Source of the DNA: Octopus sinensis
Lineage: Eukaryota
Assembly (NCBI RefSeq): GCF_006345805.1
Contig: NW_021835691.1
Coordinates: forward strand, 1 to 44,326
Direction of reading: 5' to 3'
DNA length: 44,326 nt
A program made the position numbers and the translations under genes. This document shows positions 416 through 43,042 of the stretch, piece by piece (position 1 is the first letter of the stretch; each line of letters begins with the position of its first letter). The notes under the pieces are model-generated. The model saw only the letters and a program-made list of their open reading frames with translations. It was not told where the DNA came from and searched no databases.

Positions 416-648
416 TATTTCTTTACTACCCACAAGGGCCTACACGAAGAAAGGACAGACAAGAACAGTCAAACGGATTAAGTCGATCATATCGACCCCA
501 GTGAGTAACTGGTACTTAGTTTATCGACCCCGAAACGATGAAAGGCAAAGTCGATCTCGGTGGAATTTGAACTCAGAACGTAACGGCAGACGAAATACGG
601 CTACGCATTTCGCCCGGCGTGCTAACGATTTTGCCAGCTCGCCGCCTT
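416..648 (-). mobile_element. SINE family A, full length, tail type A1
   Basis: Reverse complement reads aaggcggcgagctggcaaaatcgttagc (A-box-like), gagttcaaattcc (B box), body, and tail ending gtgggtagtaaagaaata. Many near-identical copies in the window. Confidence 0.9.
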
Positions 649-976
649 ACAGGAAGAAATAGATTCAGAGAGGCAGAGAGAGACACAGAGAGAGACACAG
701 AGAGAGACAGAGAGAGAGAGAGGTGGGGAGAGATATCATAGTACGATTAATAAATTTGCGATTGTAACAATCTGGATGGCAATCATCGCATTAAGCCGTA
801 GTTATGGTAACTGCGGTGACGCACAGACAGAGGCCGACTGACTGATTGTCAGCTGGAGGATCGTCGACTGGAATCGTTAAAGAAATCTAGAATGGCAATA
901 AAATAGCTCGTAGGATTGCAAAACTTATCCCTCAGTGGATACCATCACGGGCGCAAACAGACAGACGAATGAAATC

Positions 977-4399: not shown

Positions 4400-4652
4400 T
4401 ATATATGCATATGTGTGTGTATATGTGCATGTAAGTATGTATATATATATATATATACATAATATATATATATATATTATTTCTTTATATATATACACAC
4501 ACACAGACACCCACAAACATTCATGCGTATGTATGCATGTATGATTGTATATGCGTGTGCGTATACACATATACAAACACGCATATTATATATAGTTATA
4601 TATATATACATATATATATGTATATACATATATATGTATATATACATGTATG

Positions 4653-4690
<38 letters not shown>

Positions 4691-4975
4691 CATATATACA
4701 TACATACCTACATATATTAATATATAGGTATAAGCATGTATATATATATATTGTGTGTGTGTGTGACTATATGTGTGTGTTCGTAGTAGACATATAAATA
4801 TGCATGCATAGAGAAACGTGTATTTGTGTGTATATGTGTGTGTACGTTTGTGTGTTTGTATGTGTGTGTGAGTTTGCGTGCGTGTGATTGTGGGTGTGTA
4901 CGCTGAACATGTTTATTTATCAGTGTGTGTGAGAGTCTGTGTCTGTGTGTCTGTGTGTCTGAGTCTGTGTATGCA

Positions 4976-5022
<47 letters not shown>

Positions 5023-6240: not shown

Positions 6241-6685
6241 CATACATACACATATACATACATGTATATATACAGCTATACATACTATGCATACAAACCA
6301 ACAAACGTGCATATATACATATTTCCATCTATATACATAAATGTGTAATGGTGTCTGTCTGTGTGTGTGTGTGTGTTTTGGGTTACTCTAACTCCTCCCA
6401 TACCCTGACCAACCGAGTGTAATGATTTTTGGCACATAGGTAGATCAGGTGCCCTGAATTTCAAATATGGCTGGAATTTTTCGAAAACTCGGTAATTCTA
6501 AGCTGACATCGATTTGTGTGAGCTCAGTCGGGTGTTTGAATGAAAATTCCCATAAAGAATTTACTTTTCCTGCAGCTTGGACATCTTCCTGGTGGGGCAA
6601 GAGTTTTAGTGGTGTTTATCCTAAACATGGAATACTTTGAGAATTCGGCTTTAAGATCAACACCACTAAAACGACCCTATGGCTG

Positions 6686-7110
6686 CGATATATGGGTGAC
6701 TTCTTTATACTCTGGCCTTACCAGGAAGATGTCCAAGTGCTGTTCGGTCATGTGAACTCAATAAAGCCACCCATACAGTTCACAATGGAAAAGGAAAAAG
6801 ACTATCAGCTACCATTCCTGGACGTATTAATAATACTCACGAAGTATGAATTCAGGACATCTGTATACCGCAAGCTGACCTTCACTGGACGATACCTAAA
6901 CTTTAATTCCCACTAACCATACAGTGTAAAGAGAGGGATTGCTCAGTGCCTAAAACATCGTGTAAAGAATGTACGTAGCGATCGTGATACACACCACGAA
7001 AAAATGATCAAGCTCAATAACAATCTATTAAGTAACAACTACCCCAAAAACATACTATCCACTCCAATTATGAAGAAAAGCGAGGATGAAAGCAACAAAC
7101 TGTCCGCTGT
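6686..7110 (+). mobile_element. Penelope-like element (PLE) reverse transcriptase fragment
   Basis: DFFILW...VNSIKPPIQFTMEKEKDYQLPFLDVLI...TSVYRKLTFTGRYLNFNSH*PYSVKRGIAQCLKHR is the typical PLE RT motif 6/7 and thumb signature, with an in-frame stop. Confidence 0.88.
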
Positions 7111-9228: not shown

Positions 9229-10659
9229 AATTGTTGCTGAAATATCTCTCTTTGTGAGAACAAGCTTTATTTATTATATTCAGAATCGAATATGTTTCGT
9301 ATCATACAACTTTGAAGTCTCATTATAAGCCTGAAGTTTTGAAACCTACTTCAATTTATGGTTTGAAAATTCTAGATATGGTAATCTAAGTTTATTGGTA
9401 TTTGTTTTTGTTTTCAAGCATAAAATGTTTTCTAATTGATGAGGAAATCTATACAGATACGATGGTCAACGTATCACGTAATGTTAAGCGCCATCTGGGA
9501 GATAAATTGCAAAAGACCGCATAGAAATATTCGGAAAAATAAACTAAAGAATTATAAATGGTTCTAACCAAGCATACTTAATTTTATAAGCATTTAAAAA
9601 AAGTTAGCGTCAGGTAAATTCTAAGCAAACTAAAAAGCTAATGATTGGCTTTTTTTATATAAATAAGCACTTGCATCCCAACCAATAAACGCAAAAATAT
9701 TGGTAAACGTGCGTACATTGCGAAGCGCACACTCTTACAGTGTGCTGCCAAGGCGGCATTCCTTAATTTTTCTGACTAGTTAAATGAGACACTTTGTAAT
9801 AGGAGCTTTAGGGGTAACATATGAAACACGGCTGGCAAAAATATATTCATGTGTAAAGATAGACTAAAAAATAATCTTTGCCTTAATCCAGTTTCTAATT
9901 TAAACTTTCACCCCCACATTTCGAGGAATTAATCTCATTTCATTTCTCGATAAGACATTGATACCATAAGCTATTTTTATTAGTATACCATTAAGGTAAG
10001 CTGATCATGACGTAAAATTTCCAAAGATCTATTAATAACTTCAATTCCAGGAACTTTTCCAAAAGCAATAACGAAGTCCCTTACTATTTTTATGACTTCA
10101 TTGCTCCCACTATTTGACTTTTAACTGAAGTCGTCCTTCAAAGACTCTAATCTATTGATCTAAATCGAACCTGACTTTAATGGAAATATATAATGGTCCT
10201 AATGCTGAATTGTATCAAAGAACTCAATTGTTTAAGAAACCAGAAAGATTCTTTCATGAAAACCCCTCCAGATACGTTTGGCTTTTGAACGAAATATGTT
10301 CCATGGTGTTTGAAATTCTGTTGTCGATTTTTGCTCACTTTAGTACTAAGAAAATCTCAAGAGAGCTGAAAACAAAAAGTTTTCTGGAAAGAACCCCACG
10401 CCACTCTATTCAGACAGGTATTTCAGCTCTTAACTTCTTCCAGTCTAAGTGGCCCGGACCACATCCGGGTCATGACTTCTAAGTGCGCTTCTGCAGACAC
10501 TTTTCAACCACATGGCTATCGGAGACTTGTGCATTTAAACCTCTCAACTTTCAAACCTTATACGAAGAAATAACGTTGGTTGTCATGGTAGCGGTCAACA
10601 TCATCAAAATGACTCACTCAGAGTCACTTCCCTTAACGTTAAAATACAAAAATATTGCC

Positions 10660-13380: not shown

Positions 13381-14040
13381 AGGCGGCGAGCTTGTAGATA
13401 CTTTAGCATGCTGGGCGAAATGCTTAGCGTATTTCGTCTGCCGTTACGCTCTGAGTTCATATTCCGTCGAGGTCGACTTTGCTTTTCATCCTTTCGGGGG
13501 TGATAAATTAAGCACCAGTTACGCACTGTGGTCGATGTAATCGACTTAATCCTTTTGTCTGACTTTGTTTGTCCCCTCTATGTTTAGCCCCTTGAGGGCC
13601 ACAAATAAATAAGGAACTTTAGCACGCTGGGGGAAATGCTGGCAGAGCTGGCAGAATCGTTAGCACGTCGGGCGAAATGCTTGTCGGTATTTCGGCTGCC
13701 GTTACGTTGTGAGTTCAAATTCCGCCGGGGTCGACTTTGCCTTTCATCCTTTCGGGGTCGATAAATTAAGTACCAGTTAAGCACTGGGGTCGATATAATC
13801 GACTTAATACCTATGTCTGTCCATGTTTGTCCTCTCTATGTTTAGCCCCTTGTGGGTAATAAAGAAATAGGTATTTTGTCAGTCTTTATGTTCTGAGTTC
13901 ATATTCCGCAGAGGTTGACTTTGCCTTTCATCCTTTCGGGGGCGATACATGAAGTACCTGTTGCGTACTAAGGTCGATCTAATCGATTGGCCCCCGCCAC
14001 CAAAATTTCAGGCCTTGTACCTATAGTACAGAAGATTATT
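13381..14040 (+). mobile_element. Tandem SINE family A array (A1 unit, partial unit, A1 unit, headless A2 unit)
   Basis: Heads at 13381 and 13645, junction aaagaaata|ggtatt at 13869/13870, A2 tail ending gattattaat. Confidence 0.9.
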
Positions 14041-14187
14041 AATAGCTGTTATTGTTGTTATTTTTTAAGCCTTTGTTAGCTTTCGCTTCAACAAATCACC
14101 GAACATGTATATTGAAGCCATCCGTGAACATGCCTTCTTTTTCTTCTATATTTTATGAGTATTATACATTAGTCTATGATGCTGCAC

Positions 14188-17530: not shown

Positions 17531-17568
17531 TATTATTATTATCATCATTATTATTATTATATTATTAT

Positions 17569-17800
17569 TATTTCTTTATTGCCCACAGCGGGCTAATTAT
17601 AAAGGGGACAAAAAAAACTGACAAAGGGATTAAGTCGATTACATCGACCCCAGTGCGTAACTGGTACTTGTTTCATCGACCCCGAAAGGATAAAAGGCAA
17701 AGTCCACTTCGGCGGAATTTGAACTTAGAACGTAATGGCATACGAAATACCGCTGAGTATTCCGCCCGGCGTGGTAACGCTTCTGCCAGCTCGCCACCTT
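17569..17800 (-). mobile_element. SINE family A, full length, A1 tail
   Basis: Alignment by eye to the 416-648 copy. Confidence 0.88.
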
Positions 17801-17821
17801 ACCACTACGCCATATGTCCGT

Positions 17822-25853: not shown

Positions 25854-26884
25854 TGTGTACCATAACTTTATTTATGTGTTGAAACTTAGCTACTATTATT
25901 GGTGTTTTGTTTGTTCATCTCCAGTTGAATGCCATCGCGCAGACCAATGTTCGAAGCTGTAACCAACCGCAAATGTAACCATGCCTTTCTTGTGGACAAA
26001 GTATTTAAGACTACATAATAACCCAATGCTTCATTTTTTTTAAAGAAGGTGTATTACAGCGTGTGATTTGAATGAGATTTAGTTGCTATTTCTCACTGGC
26101 TGTTTGACTAGACAGAGTCTCCACCATTACCTTTTTATACTAGCATTCGTTCAAGCAACGACCTATAACTCCAACAAATCGTTCGCTTTCAACCTATTAT
26201 TTAATCGCCATCACTCGGAGTCAAACCCAAAGAACATTGTCGTTAGCATTTATCCTTCCGGCCGCTATTTAAAATAAACACTATTCATTTTATTATAGTG
26301 CTGGCTTCGCTCATTGAAATGAAACCATGATAGAGCACCCGTTTCTAAGGTAGATGCGATAAAATAGGTTTTACTTTATCGACTAGTACTTTCTTTATAT
26401 ATCAGGTCAGGCCGTTACTGGCACCATGTAGACCACTACCAATTGTTGGGTGGTCGGTGACTAGACTAATCTTGTTCCCTGCCTTATGTAACTTGTTACT
26501 ATTTTAATGGAGGTGTCTGGACACATAGCGTGAGAAAAAAGCAAGACTTGTTGAAGGGTAGATGAGTTCCTTGCGGACCAACTGCTATCCATTTAAAGGA
26601 ACACGATGGTAATCCACCACTAGTATCCTCGCCAGGGAAACACTATGAGAAATGTAGAACTAAGTAAATCTATGGCTTCTATCCATAGGCAACTGGTGCT
26701 TAATCGGGAAGACCTTAGTTGAAGTATGATCAACGCGTTGAAAAAAGAGTACAGTACATGACGAAGAGGACAACTTCCTTTATAGATAGAGATTTTTATG
26801 GATATATTTTACACACCTAGGGCATTGTTCTGACGTGGTTATACAGGTATGGTGTAAAATTGCATTACATAAATAAATAATTGG

Positions 26885-27090
26885 TTTGTCCCCTCTGTGT
26901 TTAGCCCCTTGTGGGTGATAAAGAAATAGGTATTTTGTTTGTCGCTATGTTCTGATTTCAAATCCTGCAGAAGTCTACTTTGCCTTTCATCCTTTAATAG
27001 GTCGATAAGTCAAGTACTGGGGACGAAGTGATCGTTTGTTCCTTTCCCCACAAAAATCCAGGCCATGTACCTATAGTAGAAAAGATTATT
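26885..27090 (+). mobile_element. SINE family A: A1 tail joined to a headless A2 unit
   Basis: Junction aagaaata|ggtatttt at 26928/26929. Confidence 0.8.
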
Positions 27091-31968: not shown

Positions 31969-32650
31969 GTCTATCAATTTCATGTCTATCAGGGTGTCTC
32001 TCGACGTCTCTACGACGTTGCTTTCCTTCCTACTTTCAAATTTTCTAGTAGGGTTTGAACTTTGCTAAATCTTGATACGTGTCTCATTCTATAAAAGCTG
32101 TCGGTGGTGGTAATGACGGTGATGATGATGATGATAATGAGGGGGGGAGGAGGAGGATAGTGTTGATGGTGGTGGTGACAAGTTTATGATGATGGTGGTG
32201 GTGGTGGTGGTGGTGGTGGTGGTGGTTGTGGTGGTGGTGGTGGTGATGATGATGATGAGGATGATGATGATGATGATGATATTGCCGGCAAGTCGTACAG
32301 TTCTATTTCCTTTAATCAGAATTGCAAAATAATCCCAATTCTGGTCACTGTGACATAAAAAAATCGGCGCTTTCTTCAAGAGATTTGAAAAATAGATAGA
32401 ATACCAAAGACACACTCGTGCATATGCATACATACATACATGTGTATGTGTGTGCATGTATATACATATATATGTGTGTGTACGCGCATGTATGTATGTA
32501 TCTATGTGCTTGTGTGTGTGTGTGTATTTATCGGTCAGATGTTTATAAAAATAAGGTCAAGTGCTTCTGGTCAGCAGATTGCATGAGTAACCTGCATTGC
32601 TGAGAATATATATATATTATATATAATACTATATATATATATATATATAT

Positions 32651-33802
32651 AGATAAGAAAGTTTGTTTGGTAAAGCACGTGGGTGAATATATAAGAAAAT
32701 AGTAAAGTGTGAAAAAACGACAGAAGGCTTAAATGTTAAAAAATATATATATTTGTGTCAAAATGTCTGGAGAATATTGGAAAAATTTTTTTCCTTTCCT
32801 TAAAATGACATAATTTTAAAATTTTTAAAGAAATGTAGATCCTTACTCACCTGGTCAGTGTAACGGGTTGCATCTTCATTGCTTTTACTTTCCCGGGCGA
32901 GTAAGTTTGATTCCTCGATTTTGTTGTTCAGGTTAAGAAGCTGTGAATTAATATTTTTCAGTTCTTGGAGTATGTCCTCATTTAAGGTTTTGTCCGAGGT
33001 GTTTGACTTCTGTGTGGCATTTTCGTTCTCACGTGTTTAATATATAGATAAGAAAGTTTGTTTGGTAAAGCACGTGGGAATATATAAGAAAATAGTAAAG
33101 TGTGAAAAAACGACAGAAGGCTTAAATGTTAAAAAATATATATATTTGTGTCAAAATGTCTGGAGAATATTGGAAAAATTTTTTTCCTTTCCTTAAAATG
33201 ACATAATTTTAAAATTTTAAAGAAATGTAGATCCTTACTACCTGGTCAGTGTAACGGGTTGCATCTTCATTGCTTTTACTTTCCCGGGCGAGTAGTTTGA
33301 TTCCTCGATTTTGTTGTTCAGGTTAAGAAGCTGTGAATTAATATTTTTCAGTTCTTTGAGTATGTCCTCATTTAAGGTTTTGTCCGAGGTGTTGAATTCT
33401 GTGGCATTTTCGTTCTCACGTGTTTAATATATAGATAAGAAAGTTTGTTTGGTAAAGCCACGTGGGTGAATATATAAGAAAATAGTAAGTGTGAAAAAAA
33501 ACGACAGAAGGCTTAAATGTTAAAAAATATATAATTTGTGTCAAAATGTCTGAGGAATATTGGAAAAATTTTTTTCCTTTCCTTAAATGACATAATTTTA
33601 AAATTTTTAAGAAATGTAGATCCTTACTCACCTGGTCAGTGTAACGGGTTGCATCTTCATTGCTTTTACTTTCCCGGGCGAGTAAGTTGATTCCTCGATT
33701 TTGTTGTTCAGGTTAAGAAGCTGTGAATTAATATTTTTCAGTTCTTTGAGTATGTCCTCATTTAAGGTTTTGTCCGAGGTGTTTGACTTCTGTGGCATTT
33801 TC
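32651..33802 (-). repeat. Three tandem copies of a ~390-bp unit (antisense to its exon)
   Basis: agataagaaagtttgtttgg starts at 32651, 33046 and 33433. Starts right after a (TA)n tract. Confidence 0.95.
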
Positions 33803-33887
33803 ACACTTTACTATTTTCTTATATATTCACCCACGTGCTTTACCAAACAAACTTTCTTATCTATATATTAAACACGTGAGAACGAAA

Positions 33888-34055
33888 ATGCCACAGAAGT
33901 CAAACACCTCGGACAAAACCTTAAATGAGGACATACTCAAAGAACTGAAAAATATTAATTCACAGCTTCTTAACCTGAACAACAAAATCGAGGAATCAAA
34001 CTTACTCGCCCGGGAAAGTAAAAGCAATGAAGATGCAACCCGTTACACTGACCAG
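33888..34055 (+). CDS. Candidate first coding exon of an unknown gene (56 codons, coiled-coil-like), the only intact copy
   Basis: gaaaATG...GACCAG|gtgagt. MPQKSNTSDKTLNEDILKELKNINSQLLNLNNKIEESNLLARESKSNEDATRYTDQ, 168 nt, phase 0. Confidence 0.6.
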
Positions 34056-34282
34056 GTGAGTAAGGATCTACATTTCTTTAAAAATTTTAAAATTATGTCA
34101 TTTTAAGGAAAGGAAAAAAATTTTTCCAATATTCTCCAGACATTTTGACACAAATATATATATTTTTTAACATTTAAGCCTTCTGTCCGTTTTTTTTCAA
34201 CACTTTACTATTTTCTTATATATTCACCCACGTGCTTTACCAACAAACTTTCTTATCTATATATTAACACGTGAGAACGAAA

Positions 34283-34449
34283 ATGCCACAGAAGTCAACA
34301 CCTCGGACAAAACCTTAAATGAGGACATACTCAAAGAACTGAAAAATATTAATTCACAGCTTCTTAACCTGAACAACAAAATCGAGGAATCAAACTTACT
34401 CGCCCGGGAAAGTAAAAGCAATGAAGATGCAACCCGTTACACTGACCAG
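34283..34449 (+). pseudogene. Frameshifted copy of the same exon (1-nt deletion). Minus-strand copies at 32851-33020, 33242-33407 and 33632-33798 also carry indels
   Basis: Lengths 167, 170, 166 and 167 nt versus 168 nt for the intact copy. Confidence 0.6.
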
Positions 34450-34620
34450 GTGAGTAAGGATCTACATTTCTTTAAAAATTTTAAAAAAAAAAAATTTTTA
34501 AATTATGTCATTTTAAGGAAAGGAAAAAAATTTTTCCAATATTCTCCAGACATTTTGACACAAATATATATATTTTTTAACATTTAAGCCTTCTGTCGTT
34601 TTTTCACACTTTACTATTTT

Positions 34621-34663
<43 letters not shown>

Positions 34664-34665
34664 AT

Positions 34666-35615
34666 TGGTGAATTGAAGAAATGGAGCTGAACGCAGATTG
34701 AACAGAAATCGTTTTATTTCATTCTACACGTGTTTCGAAAGGCACAAATTACCAAAATCCGATTGAATAATGGGACCATATTGTGTCTTTCTCTTCAGGA
34801 AGAAAAAAGGAATCCGTTGGAAAAACAAAAACAGAACAGAGGCAGAGCAAAAAACAAATCGAACTGTGCTCCTAAGAGCCCATGGCGAAACTGTTTATCA
34901 GTGTATGTTGAGACCGGTGGCTGAAGAATTCAACGGGTCAGGCATCGTTCAATCATGTGGGTGAGGTGTATAGATGTTCTTTGTGACCGAGAATAAAGTT
35001 CTGACTATTTAAAGAATATTGGATGTTTTATAAGGGGCGAAAAAATCTACTTAGAGACGTGTGTTGTGTGTATCCTGTTCTATATATGTGTGTGTTGGCG
35101 TAGGGGTAGAAAACATTTTTTTGTGTACGCGTGTGCGTTTGATGATCGTTCGGCTGTCAGTGGCTACTGCCGTGATAACGCCAACACACACATATATAGA
35201 ACAGTATACACACACACACGTCTCTATAGATTTTTCTCGCCCCTTATAAAACATCCAATATTCTTTAAATAGTCAGAACTTTATTCTCGGTCACAAAGAA
35301 CATCTATACACCCTCACCCACATGATTGACCGATGCCTGACCCGTTGAATTCTTCAGCCACCGGTTCTCAACATACACTGATAAACAGTTTCGCCATGGG
35401 CTCTTAGGAGCACAGTTCGATTTGTTTTTTGCTCTGCCTCTGTTCTGTTTTTTGTTTTTCCAACGGATTTCCTTTTTTCTTCCTGAAGAGAAAGACACAA
35501 TATGGTCCCATTATTCAATCGGATTTTGGTAATTTGTGCCTTTCGAAACACGTGTAGAATGAAATAAAACGATTTCTGTTCAATCTGCGTTCAGCTCCAT
35601 TTCTTCAATTCACCA
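34666..35615. repeat. Large palindrome: arms 34666-35101 and 35178-35615, 76-bp spacer
   Basis: Arms are near-identical reverse complements, differing mainly by single-base indels. Confidence 0.95.
34799..34960 (+). CDS. Candidate second exon (mirror copy at 35318-35482 on the minus strand)
   Basis: tgtgtctttctcttcag|GAAG...TGTGG|gtgagg. Consensus of both arms (164 nt) reads EEKRKSVGKTKNRTEAEQKTNRTVLLRAHGETVYQCMLRPVAEEFNGSGI(V/G)QSCG in phase 0. Confidence 0.55.
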
Positions 35616-35781
35616 TAATGTTTTAATTTCAATATATCCGCACCAACGCACGGTTGCACGCCAGATGGTTGTACCTCCAACCGTGCTGTTCACTGCTGTG
35701 ATTTTTGCTACTAAGGTATCGGTTAAACTTTTGATTAATCTACTACAAGATTATTCATCTTCTATTTCACATAATATATAT

Positions 35782-35829
<48 letters not shown>

Positions 35830-35859
35830 ATATGTATATATATATATATATATATATGT

Positions 35860-35932
<73 letters not shown>

Positions 35933-36059
35933 TAGGGAATAATTATCATCCTACTACAAGTGTAATTCAGTATAATAATATTAGACCGAATTTCGTATAT
36001 ATGATATATGTATATAACTAATTTAGAGACGAACCACTATGGTTCGTCTCTAAATTAGT

Positions 36060-36150
<91 letters not shown>

Positions 36151-36204
36151 TTTATATATATATACAAGATATGTATGTAGTATATATAAATATATACAAA
36201 ATGT

Positions 36205-36410
36205 GACCGCGTGTGTACCGTTGCCGATATTTTTTCTGTCTTCCCTTCTCTGGATCTTTCCTTCTCCTATGTTTCCGACGAAGAGCTCCGCTCGAAACGT
36301 TAAACCCTCCTTCTTCCCTTCCTTCCTGAGCGTCCAATAATACTATATTTGTTCCACGTCCTCGCGTTGTTGTGTTTTTTTGTGCTTTCATGTTTGGATT
36401 AACTTTATAT
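36205..36410 (+). mobile_element. PLE-type pseudo-LTR element embedded in (TA)n
   Basis: Non-coding unit with GACGAAG...CGAAACG hammerhead-type core, pyrimidine-rich 3' part, ending ggattaact(ta)n. Confidence 0.65.
36271..36305 (+). ncRNA. Minimal type I hammerhead ribozyme motif (U4C variant)
   Basis: GTTT-CCGACGA-A-GAGC(tcc)GCTC-GAAA-CG-T-T-AAAC. Stems I and II pair perfectly. Confidence 0.6.
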
Positions 36411-36630
36411 ATATATATATATATATACATATATATCAGCTGGGACCCTCGTCGTCGTAACTGACGGAGTGCTCCTTTATATATATATAGATATATATAT
36501 ATATTATATATTATATATATTATATATATATATATATATTTATAATATAATATATATATATCATTATATCATTATTTTTTGAATACAATCTTCATCATCA
36601 TTTTTCCATCTTCATTAATTATTATTATTA

Positions 36631-36680
<50 letters not shown>

Positions 36681-36682
36681 TG

Positions 36683-36906
36683 AAGGCGGCGAGCTGGCAG
36701 AAACGTAAGCCCACCGAGCGAAATGCGTAGCCGTATTTCGTCTGCCGTTACGTTCTGAGTTCAAATTCCGCCGAGGTCGACTTTACCTTTCATCCTTTCG
36801 GGGTCGATAAATTAAGTACCAGTTACGCACTGGGGTTGATGTAATCGACTTAATCCGTTTGTCTGTCCTTGTTTGTCCCCTCTATGTTTAGCCCCTTGTG
36901 GGTAGC
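36683..36906 (+). mobile_element. SINE family A, full length, well preserved, A1 tail
   Basis: aaggcggcgagctggcagaaacg...gagttcaaattccgccgaggtcgac...gccccttgtgggtagc. Confidence 0.92.
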
Positions 36907-36920
36907 AAATATATATATAT

Positions 36921-36951
<31 letters not shown>

Positions 36952-39381: not shown

Positions 39382-40553
39382 AATCTCCGGCTCTATGTAG
39401 ACGATGGTGAACAGATGTGGTCGCCGTTTCTGAGGCACGCTTTTCCGCAGCTCGTCTCCATGACCGAACTGTAGTCGTGGATCAAAAAGAGGCCGAGGAA
39501 GGGCGAATGGCACCGCGAGTGTTGCGTTGCTCTCAAAGAACTATGTCGTCCTGAGTCGACCTTGAGTGACTTCAACTCAAGCAAAGCATTCTATAGGGGA
39601 TTAATGGAGGGGAGGTACGACGACGATCTCGGGGCGAATCTGGGCGTCGACGAGGAATACCTGACCCGCCTGTTTAAGACTACTTTCGGGCCGGGACCTA
39701 TGGACAACTTCCAGAGTTCCCTGGCCTGGCAGTGCTACCGAGAAGTGCAACCCGTTCGGGATAAGTTCTACAGACACGGCTCGAGAAACACGGGGCCGAG
39801 TTGCAGTCGGACTGACGAAACCGTTCTGCACGCACTCGTGCAGTGTCCAACTATTTTTGACTTGTGGGCTTATGTCGAACGACTGCTGTCACGTGTGGGA
39901 CAAGTTGGTTTATCAGCCGAGTCTATCGTCAGTATCGTCACGCCTCCTTCCTTCAAACAGGAAGGAAAAGCTATTTTCATCATACTTGTGGCTAAGGCGA
40001 AAGAATGTATCTGGTGGACGTGACTGAAAGGATTAGAGACAAACACTATGCTCTCTGGTCAATCTCTCATCAACTTCAAGGATCCCTTGAAAAGGAAAGT
40101 GAGAGTAGAGAGGCAAGTCTTGTCTAGCGAATGTTTCAAAAAATTATGGGTGAATGTAGCAAGGATGGCACGTATGAATGACGAAGCCACCTTGAGTATA
40201 ATCCTATGAACCCGGAAAAATTTAAAACAGAGAGTTACTTACTTGCAAATAAATGTGTTAACATGTGACATTATTGACCAAGGTTACCGTAGTCTTTTCC
40301 GTGGGCTTTTCTTTCCACGGATAAACCTCATCTGTTTCCCCCTTTACACTTTATATCATGACATTTCTGTGATACACGATCCCTATTCATCGATTTTTTC
40401 TCCCTTTTTTTCCTTTCCTTTCTTTCCTCTTTCTCTTTCCTTTGTCTTTCCTTTTTAATCGAAAACCTACCCCCCTTTTTTTCTCCCCACAAAGAAAAGC
40501 TCTACCTTGTAATTTGACCCGTCTGTGTGCAGCCCTGTGTGGCTTATAAAGAA
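39382..40553 (+). mobile_element. 5'-truncated Tx1/L1-clade LINE (ORF2 C-terminus plus 3' UTR) in (TATC)n
   Basis: LAWQCYREVQPVRDKFYRHG...SCSRTDETVLHALVQCPTIFDLWAYV (zf-RVT/CCHC-like) and KECIWWT*...VERQVLSSECFKKLW. In-frame stops; ORF ends at 40209. Confidence 0.85.
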
Positions 40554-41868: not shown

Positions 41869-42120
41869 GGCAGAAGTTCAAAAGATAGTGCTCGTGGGAA
41901 CTGCTCATATCCTACGCAAAATACTTTCTTTGTAATCTCAAGTTTTAAAACAAACATAATTTTCGTATGGCTTTTTAGGCATTCACTAGTACAACACTAA
42001 GTACAAAATCAAATATATGGCACCCTAGGCATAACACCATGAACTTCCAACTTGTCTCTTGAGGTCTCTGGGTGAGACTTGGAGCCAGCTTGTGCAAATG
42101 TAAAGCAAATGTCAAACATA
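41867..42120 (+). mobile_element. R4/Dong-clade LINE, extreme 3' fragment in (AAT)n
   Basis: AEVQKIVLVGTAHILRKILSL* plus a 3' UTR nearly identical to 42790-43042. Confidence 0.85.
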
Positions 42121-42148
42121 TAATAATGATGATGATAATAACAACAAC

Positions 42149-42215
<67 letters not shown>

Positions 42216-43042
42216 GACAAAGCCCTGTCCCATCAATGGCTAATGACCTCTGGCTTAAAATCTGAAACAGAAGGGCTTATCATGGCAGCTCAAGATCAAT
42301 GCCTACCTACAAGGAACTACCAGGCCAACATATTAAAGAACGGCAATAGCCCAACATGTTGTGTATGTCAACAACAAAATGAAACCCTTGATCATGTTGT
42401 CTCCAAGTGCAGTCTTCTTGCGCCTGCAGAGTATCTCAACATGCATGATAGAACTGCACAATATATTCACTGGGTAATTTGAAGAAGCCTTGACTTGCCC
42501 CATGATAAAAACTGGTGGGAACACAAACCACCTCCAGTGCTTGAAAATGACCGCATCTCACTCCTCTGGAACTTCACCATTAAAACTGACAGAAAGATAG
42601 ACGCGAAGAGGCCAGACATCATAGTAAAAGACTTCAGACAAAAAACATGCCTCCTCATTGATATATCTGTCCCAATCGATATAAACGTATCTGTCAAGAC
42701 CTACCAGAAACTGAGCATATATAAGATCTGGAAGTAGAAATCAGCAAAATGTGGAACTTGAAGCCTAAAACAACCAGGAAACCCCCAAAATGGCAGAAAT
42801 TCAAAATATAGTGCTCATGGGAACTGCTCATATCCTACGCAAAATACTTTCTTTGTAATCTCAAGTTTTAAAACAAGCATAATTTTCGTATGGTTTTTTT
42901 TAGGCATTCACTAGTACAACACTAAGTACAAAACCAAATATATGGCACCCTAGGCATAACACCAACATGAACTTCCAATTTGTTGTCTCTGGGTGAGACT
43001 TGGAGCCAGCTTGTGCAAATGTAAAGCAAAAGTCAAACATAG
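42216..43042 (+). mobile_element. R4/Dong-clade LINE, 5'-truncated, CCHC plus restriction-like endonuclease region, in (AAT)n
   Basis: ETEGLIMAAQDQCLPTRNY...CCVCQQQNETLDHVVSKC...HD...HW...LLWNFTIKTDRKIDAKRPDIIV...LIDISVP...K, an RLE PD-(D/E)xK signature. Confidence 0.9.

What the first reader, a model, noticed from the sequence alone, without database searches (positions are those of the whole stretch)
33888..35482. Hidden two-exon gene that can only be read by combining error-complementary repeat copies
Seen: a 168-nt exon (ATG to CAG|GTGAGT, phase 0) lies upstream of a strong acceptor (tctttctcttcag at 34798). The second exon is broken in both arms of the palindrome, at different places: the left arm lacks two A's early, the right arm has one extra A late. 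The consensus is a 164-nt open exon ending at GG|GTGAG. Spliced product: MPQKS...ILKELKNINSQLLNLNNKIEES...YTDQ-EEKRKSVGK...RTVLLRAHGETVYQCMLRPVAEEFNGSGIVQSCG. Inference: this is the 5' end of a real spliced gene (heptad-like helix, basic linker, globular start) that I cannot assign to a family. It may be a lineage-specific host gene or a transposon-borne accessory ORF. The ORF track misses it.
Basis: partly seen in the sequence, partly recalled or inferred. Interest (0 to 1): 0.75.

Follow-up and report, generated by a model that had tools for sequence, protein, structure and literature searches.

The report
Penelope-like retrotransposon fragment, not a gene
The proposed "first exon" is the first 56 codons of an octopus Penelope-like retrotransposon protein gene, copied five times in a tandem and inverted array, and the "second exon" is a stitched-together reading of an unrelated palindrome, so there is no hidden two-exon gene here.

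Summary

**Exon 1.**
- 33888-34055 is a real 168-nt ATG...CAG|GTGAGT open frame.
- It is one of five copies of a ~395-bp unit: three on the minus strand (32645-33802) and two on the plus strand (33787-34629). Four of the five are frame-broken.
- Full-length relatives in Octopus vulgaris are 98-99% identical in DNA. They show the unit is the last ~190 nt of a pseudo-LTR plus the first 185 nt of ORF1 of a Penelope-like element (PLE).
- The PLE carries ORF1 (451 aa) and ORF2 (reverse transcriptase plus GIY-YIG endonuclease).
- In intact copies ORF1 reads straight through the "donor": CAG GTR/GTT AGT encodes Gln-Val-Ser, with synonymous variation in the Val codon. Val-Ser is kept in homologues only 39-46% identical.

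**Exon 2.**
- It lies in an unrelated 438-bp-arm palindrome (34666-35615).
- It has no homologue. Two of the eight possible mosaics are open in phase 0, and random sequence gives at least one open mosaic 12-24% of the time.

**Most likely origin.** The array is a non-autonomous mini-PLE inserted head-to-head into a (TA)n tract. It shows the typical PLE signatures: inverted 5'-truncated copies and a 40-nt "tail" at one end only.

**Open point.** The in-frame GTRAGT is used as a donor in at least 17 O. vulgaris gene models, each with a different second exon.

Interest is low.

The parts
32606..32655 (.). (TA)n microsatellite flanking the left end of the PLE-derived block. It is the presumed AT-rich insertion target.
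   Evidence: TRF; sequence. PLEs prefer (TA)n or AT-rich targets (PMC8557442, PMC11167929).
32645..32834 (-). Terminal pLTR fragment (element coordinates q118-308, equivalent to q4115-4303) that closes the minus-strand array. It includes the ~40-nt 'tail' at 32645-32686.
   Evidence: blastn to the full-length PLE L003:5674-9976, 99%; tail located.
32834..33226 (-). Complete ~395-bp unit (q118-512): last 190 nt of the pLTR, a 19-nt linker, then ORF1 nt 1-185. The ORF1 start is frame-broken by a CA insertion.
33226..33615 (-). Complete unit (q118-512). It carries 10 small indels, including loss of the G/A in the 'donor' (GGT-AGT), so the frame is broken.
33615..33802 (-). 5'-truncated unit (q324-512). 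The ORF1 start codon is at 33800-33798. There is a 1-nt deletion in an A-run.
33787..33802 (.). Head-to-head inversion junction. These 16 nt align to both the minus-strand block (antisense of the ORF1 start) and the plus-strand block (pLTR), which is an imperfect microhomology.
   Evidence: Overlapping blastn alignments; read from the sequence.
33787..34072 (+).
   Evidence: 98% identity to L003 with no indels.
33888..34055 (+). The frame runs on through GTG AGT (Val-Ser) to a stop at 34104-34106, because the unit is cut off 17 nt after the 'donor'.
   Evidence: It is 100% identical to the first 56 residues of the 451-aa ORF1 of L003 and L006.
34072..34466 (+). Complete unit (q118-512). The ORF1 copy at 34283-34449 has a 1-nt deletion and several stops.
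34490..34629 (+). Terminal pLTR fragment (q126-266) closing the plus-strand array. It ends at the alternative, tail-less 3' terminus (q4263). It is preceded by a 23-nt A/T insertion at 34467-34489.
   Evidence: The same terminus is seen in L004, L006 and L007.
34623..34660 (.). (TA)19 microsatellite between the PLE block and the palindrome.
   Evidence: TRF.
34666..35103 (+). Left arm of the unrelated palindrome. It contains the acceptor-like tract ending at 34798 and 'exon 2' as written (34799-34960, 162 nt, one stop in phase 0).
   Evidence: No similarity to the PLE or to other loci.
35104..35177 (.). 74-nt asymmetric spacer of the palindrome.
35178..35615 (-). Right arm of the palindrome, 97.7% identical to the left arm. 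Its 'exon 2' copy is 35482-35318 (165 nt, one stop in phase 0).
   Evidence: The hairpin folds at -536 kcal/mol, z = -70.

Best explanation
Region 32645-34629 is a decayed, non-autonomous derivative of an octopus Penelope-like retrotransposon (PLE).

**The full-length element** (about 4.3 kb) has these parts:
- pseudo-LTRs of about 305 bp;
- ORF1, 451 aa, with an N-terminal long helix, a conserved helical core and a disordered basic tail;

**The window's unit** is about 395 bp. It holds only the last ~190 nt of the pseudo-LTR, a 19-nt linker and the first 185 nt of ORF1. The end of that ORF1 piece is joined back to the pseudo-LTR at the junction GGATCTACA|TTTCTTT. The 'GTGAGT donor' is the in-frame Val-Ser that follows them.

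**Shown here:** the identity of the unit, the read-through ORF1, the array anatomy and the PLE hallmarks.

**Inferred mechanism:**
- The unit keeps exactly the parts a PLE reverse transcriptase needs in cis. These are the two initiation sites at the pseudo-LTR end (40 nt apart, the 'tail') and the start of the downstream ORF. In vitro, the Anolis PLE needs the first 172 nt of its ORF.
- A multi-unit transcript was copied by the RT of autonomous copies into a (TA)n tract.
- Both target strands were cleaved and extended. This produced two 5'-truncated arrays that meet head-to-head at 33787-33802, with their 3' termini facing outward.

**The neighbouring palindrome** (34666-35615) is a separate inverted duplication of unknown family. 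'Exon 2' is a chance open frame assembled from its two arms.
For: **Copies of the unit**
- Five copies share one deletion junction.

**Full-length relatives and ORF1**
- O. vulgaris loci L003, L006 and L007 hold full-length copies 98-99% identical to the unit.
- ORF1 is an intact 451 aa in L003, L004 and L006 and reads through the 'donor'.
- The Val codon is GTG, GTA or GTT, all synonymous.
- Val-Ser is conserved in homologues 39-46% identical.
- ORF1 dN/dS between L003 and L004 is 0.33 overall and 0.17 in the core.
- The model of homologue P0016 has a single helix over residues 7-77, which crosses the supposed exon boundary.

**ORF2 and PLE membership**
- L007 ORF2 (621 aa) matches RVT_1 at 31.6 bits, above the 29.6 cutoff. 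The motif IIYVIKCSGCHQDYVGSTG is visible.
- The relative in L002 is 60-66% identical. It matches RVT_1 (29.3 bits, just below the 29.6 cutoff, E 8.7e-07) and GIY-YIG at 24.4 bits, above the 22.6 cutoff.
- The pseudo-LTR direct repeats are L003 5674-5981 and 9669-9976.
- L006 has an upstream partial tandem copy. L007 has an adjacent inverted 5'-truncated copy.
- Alternative 3' termini lie 40 nt apart at q4263 and q4303. The window has one of each at its two outer ends.
- (TA)n flanks both ends.

**Literature**
- PMC8557442 describes pLTRs, tandem and inverted insertions, a tail at one end, (TA)n targets, and ORF1 with a coiled coil.
- PMC11167929 reports two RT start sites that define the tail, a template requirement for the first 172 nt of the ORF, and cleavage and extension of both strands.

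**Against exon 2**
Against: - No hammerhead ribozyme was found in the unit or in full-length copies. Many canonical PLEs have one, although the N-terminal-EN Naiads lack it.
- The deletion junction was found only in the window, not in the six other loci sampled. Retrotransposition of a mini-element is therefore not shown. Local tandem duplication plus inversion, or a long-read assembly artefact, could give the same picture.
- The 172-nt requirement was measured for a single-ORF Poseidon element. Here the ORF after the pLTR is ORF1, so the analogy is imperfect.
- The GIY-YIG Pfam score is below cutoff in this exact family (14-15 bits).
- The palindrome remains unclassified.
Confidence: 0.85

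Rival explanations
1. One reading: a lineage-specific, spliced, two-exon (or longer) protein-coding gene. Exon 1 (33888-34055) is joined to a consensus exon 2 reconstructed from the two palindrome arms.
For: - A consensus-strength donor and a pyrimidine-rich acceptor are present.
- One mosaic is open in phase 0.
- Exon 1 is conserved, coding-type sequence.
Against: - Intact homologues have no intron at this site and continue into different sequence.
- Four of the five exon-1 copies are broken.
- Exon 2 has no homologue.
- A second, different mosaic is equally open, and the chance expectation is 12-24%.
- The 17 or more annotated models that use this donor have 17 or more different second exons, none matching.
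Confidence: 0.03
2. A TE-initiated chimeric transcript. The pLTR promoter of the PLE fragment fires, and the in-frame CAG|GTGAGT acts as a cryptic donor. It is spliced to whatever acceptor lies downstream, here possibly 34798, giving a non-conserved and probably non-functional transcript. This is compatible with the best explanation.
For: - In six O. vulgaris loci examined, annotated models start at the PLE ATG. They splice from this exact site over the rest of the element to canonical AG acceptors 10-39 kb away.
- Two models attach it to real genes: DGCR6 (P0018) and a receptor-type tyrosine phosphatase (P0020).
- That annotation combined Iso-Seq and RNA-seq assemblies with ab initio prediction run on repeat-masked sequence (PMC10700109).
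- All four AGGTRAGT sites in the window belong to this unit.
Against: - No expression data could be examined here.
- The models could be artefacts of TransDecoder or EVM.
- The donor is GTTAGT (weak) in older copies, and its variation is synonymous, so selection acts on coding rather than on splicing.
- Nothing shows use of the 34798 acceptor.
Confidence: 0.15
3. The tandem and inverted arrangement, and the neighbouring palindrome, are not products of retrotransposition. They arose by local duplication and inversion (fold-back replication errors in a (TA)n-rich fragile region), or they are artefacts of a long-read assembly.
For: - Differences between copies are dominated by 1-nt homopolymer indels: 24 indels against 17 substitutions relative to L003. 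The same holds between the palindrome arms. This is the typical residual error of nanopore assemblies, and the O. vulgaris reference cites Flye (long error-prone reads) and the HyPo long-read polisher (PMC10700109).
- The deletion junction is unique to this window among the loci sampled.
- Long (TA)n tracts surround both structures.
Against: - Both outer ends coincide exactly with the two family-specific 3' termini, and the tail is present at one end only.
- The same inverted architecture occurs at an independent locus, L007.
- The palindrome has a 74-nt asymmetric centre rather than a perfect fold-back.
Confidence: 0.2

Closest known systems
Canonical C-terminal-endonuclease Penelope-like elements (Neptune/Nematis/Poseidon type; Craig et al. 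2021, PMC8557442)
   Same: - Reverse transcriptase followed by a GIY-YIG endonuclease.
- A CX4CxxC linker, a motif reported for Neptune and Nematis.
- Pseudo-LTRs formed by partial tandems.
- An adjacent inverted 5'-truncated copy.
- An optional 40-nt tail at the 3' end.
- (TA)n targets.
- A separate upstream ORF1 with a coiled coil. ORF1 plus ORF2 is also reported for a killifish Neptune element (PMC12602865).
   Different: - The window holds only a 395-bp internally deleted piece, with no RT or EN.
- No hammerhead ribozyme was detected in the pLTR.
- ORF1 is long (451 aa) and matches no Pfam family, PDB sequence or PDB fold.
- The clade was not determined by phylogeny.
Non-LTR retrozymes and non-autonomous PLE derivatives (bioRxiv 10.64898/2026.07.22.740005; the Chlamys non-autonomous elements in PMC8557442)
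   Same: - Short units of a few hundred nt derived from the PLE pLTR region.
- Head-to-tail tandem arrays.
- No coding capacity for RT, so presumably mobilised in trans.
   Different: - Retrozymes are defined by a hammerhead ribozyme in each unit. None is present here.
- This unit also carries the first 185 nt of ORF1.
- Copies at other sites were not shown.
TE-derived alternative first exons and chimeric TE-gene transcripts (a general phenomenon, from my own knowledge)
   Same: A TE promoter plus a TE-internal cryptic donor is annotated as the first exon of many unrelated gene models.
   Different: - Transcript support was not examined here.
- At this window locus no downstream host exon was identified.

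Membership tests
Penelope-like element (EN+ PLE) | PLE-type reverse transcriptase ORF | tested here: met
   - This holds for full-length copies of the same family (98-99% DNA identity to the window unit). L007 ORF2 matches RVT_1 at 31.6 bits against a 29.6 cutoff.
- The L002 relative matches RVT_1 at E 8.7e-7, 29.3 bits, just under the 29.6 cutoff.
- It is not present in the window's fragment itself.
Penelope-like element (EN+ PLE) | GIY-YIG endonuclease fused to the RT | tested here: met
   - The L002 relative (60-66% identical to L003 ORF2) matches GIY-YIG at 24.4 bits against a 22.6 cutoff.
- In L003 and L007 the score is only 14-15 bits, but the IIY...YVG motif and the upstream CGRSNCATC are visible.
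Penelope-like element (EN+ PLE) | Pseudo-LTRs from partial tandem insertion | tested here: met
   - L003 5674-5981 matches 9669-9976.
- L006 has an upstream 5'-truncated copy at 4435-4979.
- L002 shows the tandem order ORF2-pLTR-ORF1-ORF2.
Penelope-like element (EN+ PLE) | Adjacent inverted 5'-truncated copy (inverted-repeat insertion structure) | tested here: met
   - In L007 the inverted copy q2462-4263 abuts the full-length copy at position 4834.
- The window blocks 32645-33802 (-) and 33787-34629 (+) meet head-to-head.
Penelope-like element (EN+ PLE) | Optional 30-40-nt 'tail' (two alternative 3' ends), often at one end only | tested here: met
   - Copies end at q4263 (L004, L006, L007, window 34629) or at q4303 (L003, L005, window 32645).
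- The feature is defined in PMC8557442 and PMC11167929.
Penelope-like element (EN+ PLE) | Hammerhead ribozyme motif in the pLTR (typical of canonical PLEs, not universal) | tested here: not met
   - Rfam at E<=1 found none in window 32000-36500 or in L003 5000-10500.
- A CUGANGA...GAAA scan gave no credible core.
Non-LTR retrozyme | Tandem array of short PLE-pLTR-derived units | tested here: met
   About 5.2 units of ~395 bp derived from the pLTR and the ORF1 start.
Non-LTR retrozyme | Self-cleaving hammerhead ribozyme in each unit | tested here: not met
   - ORF1 is continuous across the site in L003, L004, L006 and P0016.
- Homology extends past the 'donor'.
   - No protein hit to the second half of the mosaic.
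- No Pfam match.
- Chance expectation is 12-24%.

The most novel reading that the evidence does not exclude
The 5' module of this PLE consists of the pLTR promoter, ORF1 codons 1-56 and an in-frame consensus donor CAG|GTRAGT. It may behave as a mobile 'first exon'. On this reading it is really transcribed and spliced to downstream host exons at many octopus loci. At least 17 O. vulgaris models use it, including DGCR6 and a receptor-type tyrosine phosphatase. The window's 395-bp mini-unit would be the minimal package that spreads both this module and the cis-signals for trans-mobilisation. Those signals are the two RT start sites and the first ~185 nt of the ORF, which mirrors the 172-nt requirement measured in vitro.
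Probability: 0.3. Interest if true: 0.45.

Novelty: new member of a known kind. Interest (0 to 1): 0.2.

Why it matters
- **For this finding.** A tempting "hidden gene" is removed. A consensus splice donor can sit in frame inside a retrotransposon ORF and mislead both a human reader and annotation pipelines. At least 17 "hypothetical protein" models in the O. vulgaris annotation begin with this same 56-residue PLE peptide.
- **For transposon biology.** The array is a natural deletion derivative that keeps only the pLTR end and the first 185 nt of the downstream ORF. This is the region shown in vitro to be needed by a PLE reverse transcriptase. If copies with the same junction exist elsewhere, they would give in vivo support for those cis-requirements, in an element without a hammerhead ribozyme.

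Tried and rejected
- **Pfam on both open mosaics of the spliced product:** only sub-threshold noise.
- **Pfam on ORF1 (255 and 451 aa) and on P0016:** nothing.
- **PDB sequence search:** the ORF1 alignment profile and the L007 ORF2 sequence each gave nothing.
- **AlphaFold model of the ORF1 homologue P0016:** mean pLDDT 58.7, with the core at 80-93. The protein is all-helical with a disordered C-terminal 150 residues. A Foldseek search against the PDB gave no match at E<=0.001, only generic helical bundles.
- **Exhaustive HMMER search with the 56-aa peptide:** only O. vulgaris repeat-derived models, no distant family.
- **Hammerhead ribozymes:** none by Rfam or by motif scan. The miRNA-family 'hits' at 33751-33936 and around 32410-32520 are far below gathering scores. 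They reflect the inverted repeat and microsatellites.
- **tRNA-derived SINE origin for the palindrome:** no tRNA-like gene found.
- **Palindrome against the PLE, the rest of the window and other octopus loci:** no similarity. blastn (word size 7) and tblastx were run against the PLE, and blastn against about 200 kb in total. A second blastn also covered L006 and L007.
- **Annotated second exons:** I checked whether any of the second exons attached to this peptide in O. vulgaris lies in the window. None does.
- **Back-splicing as the origin of the unit junction:** considered and rejected. The junction lies 17 nt past the GT and has no AG acceptor.
Full report
**1. Observation.**
- The window is AT-rich, microsatellite-laden animal DNA.
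- The protein hits place it in Octopus. The exon-1 peptide is 100% identical to the start of a dozen 'hypothetical predicted proteins' of Octopus vulgaris.
  - 33888-34055 is a 168-nt ATG...CAG frame followed by GTGAGT.
  - A pyrimidine tract ends in CAG at 34798.
  - The palindrome arms are 34666-35103 and 35178-35615, with a 74-nt asymmetric centre.
  - The arms differ by three single-A indels inside the proposed exon 2, exactly as described. They also differ by a T/G substitution and a G indel.

**2. Exon 1 is one of five copies of a repeat.**
- A ~390-395-bp unit occurs three times on the minus strand (32645-33802; TRF period 390).
- It occurs about 2.2 times on the plus strand (33787-34629). 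The two blocks meet head-to-head.
- Only the copy at 33888 keeps the 56 codons intact. The others carry frameshifts.
- All four strong AGGTRAGT sites in the 44-kb window belong to this unit.

**3. What the unit is.**
- O. vulgaris gene models that begin with this peptide each continue with a different, unrelated second exon. That pattern is the signature of a repeat.
- I fetched the DNA of six such loci. In each, the peptide is the start of a long ORF with no intron.
  - In L003, L004 and L006 the ORF is an intact 451 codons: MPQKS...RYTDQ-VSKDLQLLYTTLNS...RKNRR.
  - The 'donor' is simply the codons Val-Ser. The Val codon is GTG in the window, GTA in L003, and GTT in L001, L004 and L005. This variation is synonymous.
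  - Val-Ser is retained in homologues only 39-46% identical (EVSQDL, EVSRHI, QVSQQI).
- Homology between the window and these ORFs runs 5-8 codons beyond the 'donor'.
- ORF1 is under purifying selection. dN/dS between L003 and L004 is 0.33 overall and 0.17 in the conserved core.
- An AlphaFold model of the homologue P0016 shows one continuous helix over residues 7-77, crossing the supposed exon boundary. Three more long helices follow, then a disordered basic tail.

**4. The element is a Penelope-like retrotransposon.**
- Downstream of ORF1 lies ORF2. It is 621 aa and intact in L007.
  - It matches RVT_1 above Pfam's cutoff.
  - It carries a CGRSNCATC linker and an IIYVIKCSGCHQDYVGSTG motif.
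- A related element on a metagenome contig (L002) has ORF1 46% identical and ORF2 60-66% identical. It matches RVT_1 (29.3 bits, just below the cutoff) and GIY-YIG above its cutoff. Its order is the tandem ORF2-pLTR-ORF1-ORF2.
- The octopus copies show the structural hallmarks listed for PLEs in PMC8557442 and PMC11167929:
  - Direct pseudo-LTRs of ~305 bp (L003 5674-5981 and 9669-9976).
  - An upstream partial tandem copy in L006.
  - An inverted 5'-truncated copy abutting the full-length one in L007.
  - Two alternative 3' termini 40 nt apart, the 'tail'.
  - Insertion next to (TA)n.
- PLEs are an annotated component of the O. vulgaris repeatome (PMC13282606). Two-ORF PLEs are also known (PMC8557442 Fig. 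1 legend; PMC12602865).
- No hammerhead ribozyme was detectable. I therefore file the family as an EN+ PLE without that optional feature.

**5. Anatomy of the window's block in element coordinates** (q1 = pLTR start, ATG = q328).
- Each unit is q118-512: the last ~190 nt of the pLTR, a 19-nt linker and ORF1 nt 1-185. q512 is joined back to q118 at GGATCTACA|TTTCTTT.
- Minus block: [q324-512][q118-512][q118-512][q118-308]. It ends at 32645 with the tail (32645-32686), against (TA)n.
- Plus block: [q227-512][q118-512][23-nt A/T insert][q126-266]. It ends at 34629 at the tail-less terminus, against (TA)19.
- The two 5'-truncated ends overlap in an imperfect 16-nt microhomology at 33787-33802.
- The structure is the classic PLE picture: an inverted pair with 3' ends facing outward, the tail at one end only, in a (TA)n target. 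Here it is built from an internally deleted mini-element.

**6. Mechanism (inference).**
- Frangieh et al. (PMC11167929) showed three things for a PLE RT:
  - It initiates at two internal sites that bound the tail.
  - It needs the first 172 nt of the downstream ORF in the template RNA.
  - It cleaves and extends both target strands.
- The window's unit retains just those parts.
- I therefore propose a non-autonomous template mobilised in trans. A multi-unit transcript was copied from the q266 and q308 start sites back through successive units. This happened on both strands of a (TA)n target.
- I give about 0.6 to this specific scenario, against local duplication and inversion or an assembly artefact.
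- Two points argue against it:
  - The junction was seen only in this window among seven loci.
  - Differences between copies are mostly homopolymer indels, which is compatible with nanopore error.

**7. Exon 2.**
- The palindrome has no similarity to the PLE, to the rest of the window or to the other octopus loci fetched (about 200 kb in all). It has no tRNA-like part.
- No protein or Pfam match exists for the mosaic peptide.
- The mosaic is not unique. Of the eight indel combinations, two are open in phase 0, and every combination is open in some frame.
- Simulated sequence of the same composition yields an open mosaic in 12-24% of trials.
- I conclude that exon 2 is a chance frame. What the palindrome itself is remains open. 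Candidates are a fold-back element or an inverted pair of 5'-truncated copies of another (TA)n-targeting retroelement.

**8. A residue of truth in the splice idea.**
- In all six loci examined, the O. vulgaris annotation splices from exactly this site, over the rest of the PLE, to AG acceptors 10-39 kb away.
- Two models graft the peptide onto DGCR6 and onto a receptor tyrosine phosphatase.
- That annotation used Iso-Seq and RNA-seq assemblies, and ran ab initio prediction on masked sequence. Some of these junctions may therefore be real TE-initiated chimeric transcripts. This could not be tested here.

**9. Verdict.**
- This is an ordinary, decayed transposon fragment next to an unrelated palindrome. 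It is not a hidden gene.
- It counts as a new member of a known kind and is of low interest.
- Two modest leads remain: the mini-PLE as a natural map of cis-requirements, and a PLE-borne cryptic donor that contaminates or creates first exons.

Noticed in passing
O. vulgaris proteins P0001-P0015, P0018, P0020; loci L001, L003-L007: At least 17 annotated 'hypothetical' proteins of O. vulgaris start with the same 56-residue PLE ORF1 peptide and continue with unrelated exons 10-39 kb downstream. Two of them graft it onto DGCR6 and onto a receptor-type tyrosine phosphatase. They are either annotation artefacts or TE-initiated chimeric transcripts.
   Followed up: partly
window 6680-7084 (+): A remnant of a different Penelope-like reverse transcriptase. 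It is 33-35% identical to L003 ORF2 and to the L002 RT, and contains one stop.
   Followed up: no
window 39562-40023 (+) and 42072-42482 (+): ORFs with weak zf-RVT matches, which are C-terminal ends of LINE-type reverse transcriptases. The window is TE-rich and no host exon was recognised.
   Followed up: no
L002 (ENA ERZ23499095, scaffold_4415, 3787 bp): A contig labelled as metagenomic carries a tandem PLE (ORF2-pLTR-ORF1-ORF2) related to the octopus family. ORF1 is 46% identical and ORF2 is 60-66% identical. It is presumably animal, possibly molluscan, DNA in that sample.
   Followed up: partly
L003/L005 versus L004/L006/L007 3' ends; window 32645 versus 34629: Copies of this PLE family end at one of two sites 40 nt apart (q4263 or q4303), each running into TATATA. 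This matches the two RT start sites and 'tail' described for an Anolis PLE.
   Followed up: yes
window 36018-36058: A small, near-perfect 41-nt palindrome (taatttagagacgaaccactatggttcgtctctaaattag) embedded in a long (TA)n tract. It is picked up only as sub-threshold miRNA-like hits.
   Followed up: no
window 416-649, 1965-2395, 13383-14044, 17568-17801, 26884-26995, 36669-36921: An interspersed repeat of about 180-340 bp, present in both orientations at 76-89% identity. It is probably one of the abundant octopus SINE families.
   Followed up: no
window 34666 / 35615 flanks: The palindrome is flanked on both sides by TAAT (ATAAT|TGGTG...CACCA|TAATG). This could be a 4-bp target duplication, or just the AT-rich context.
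   Followed up: no
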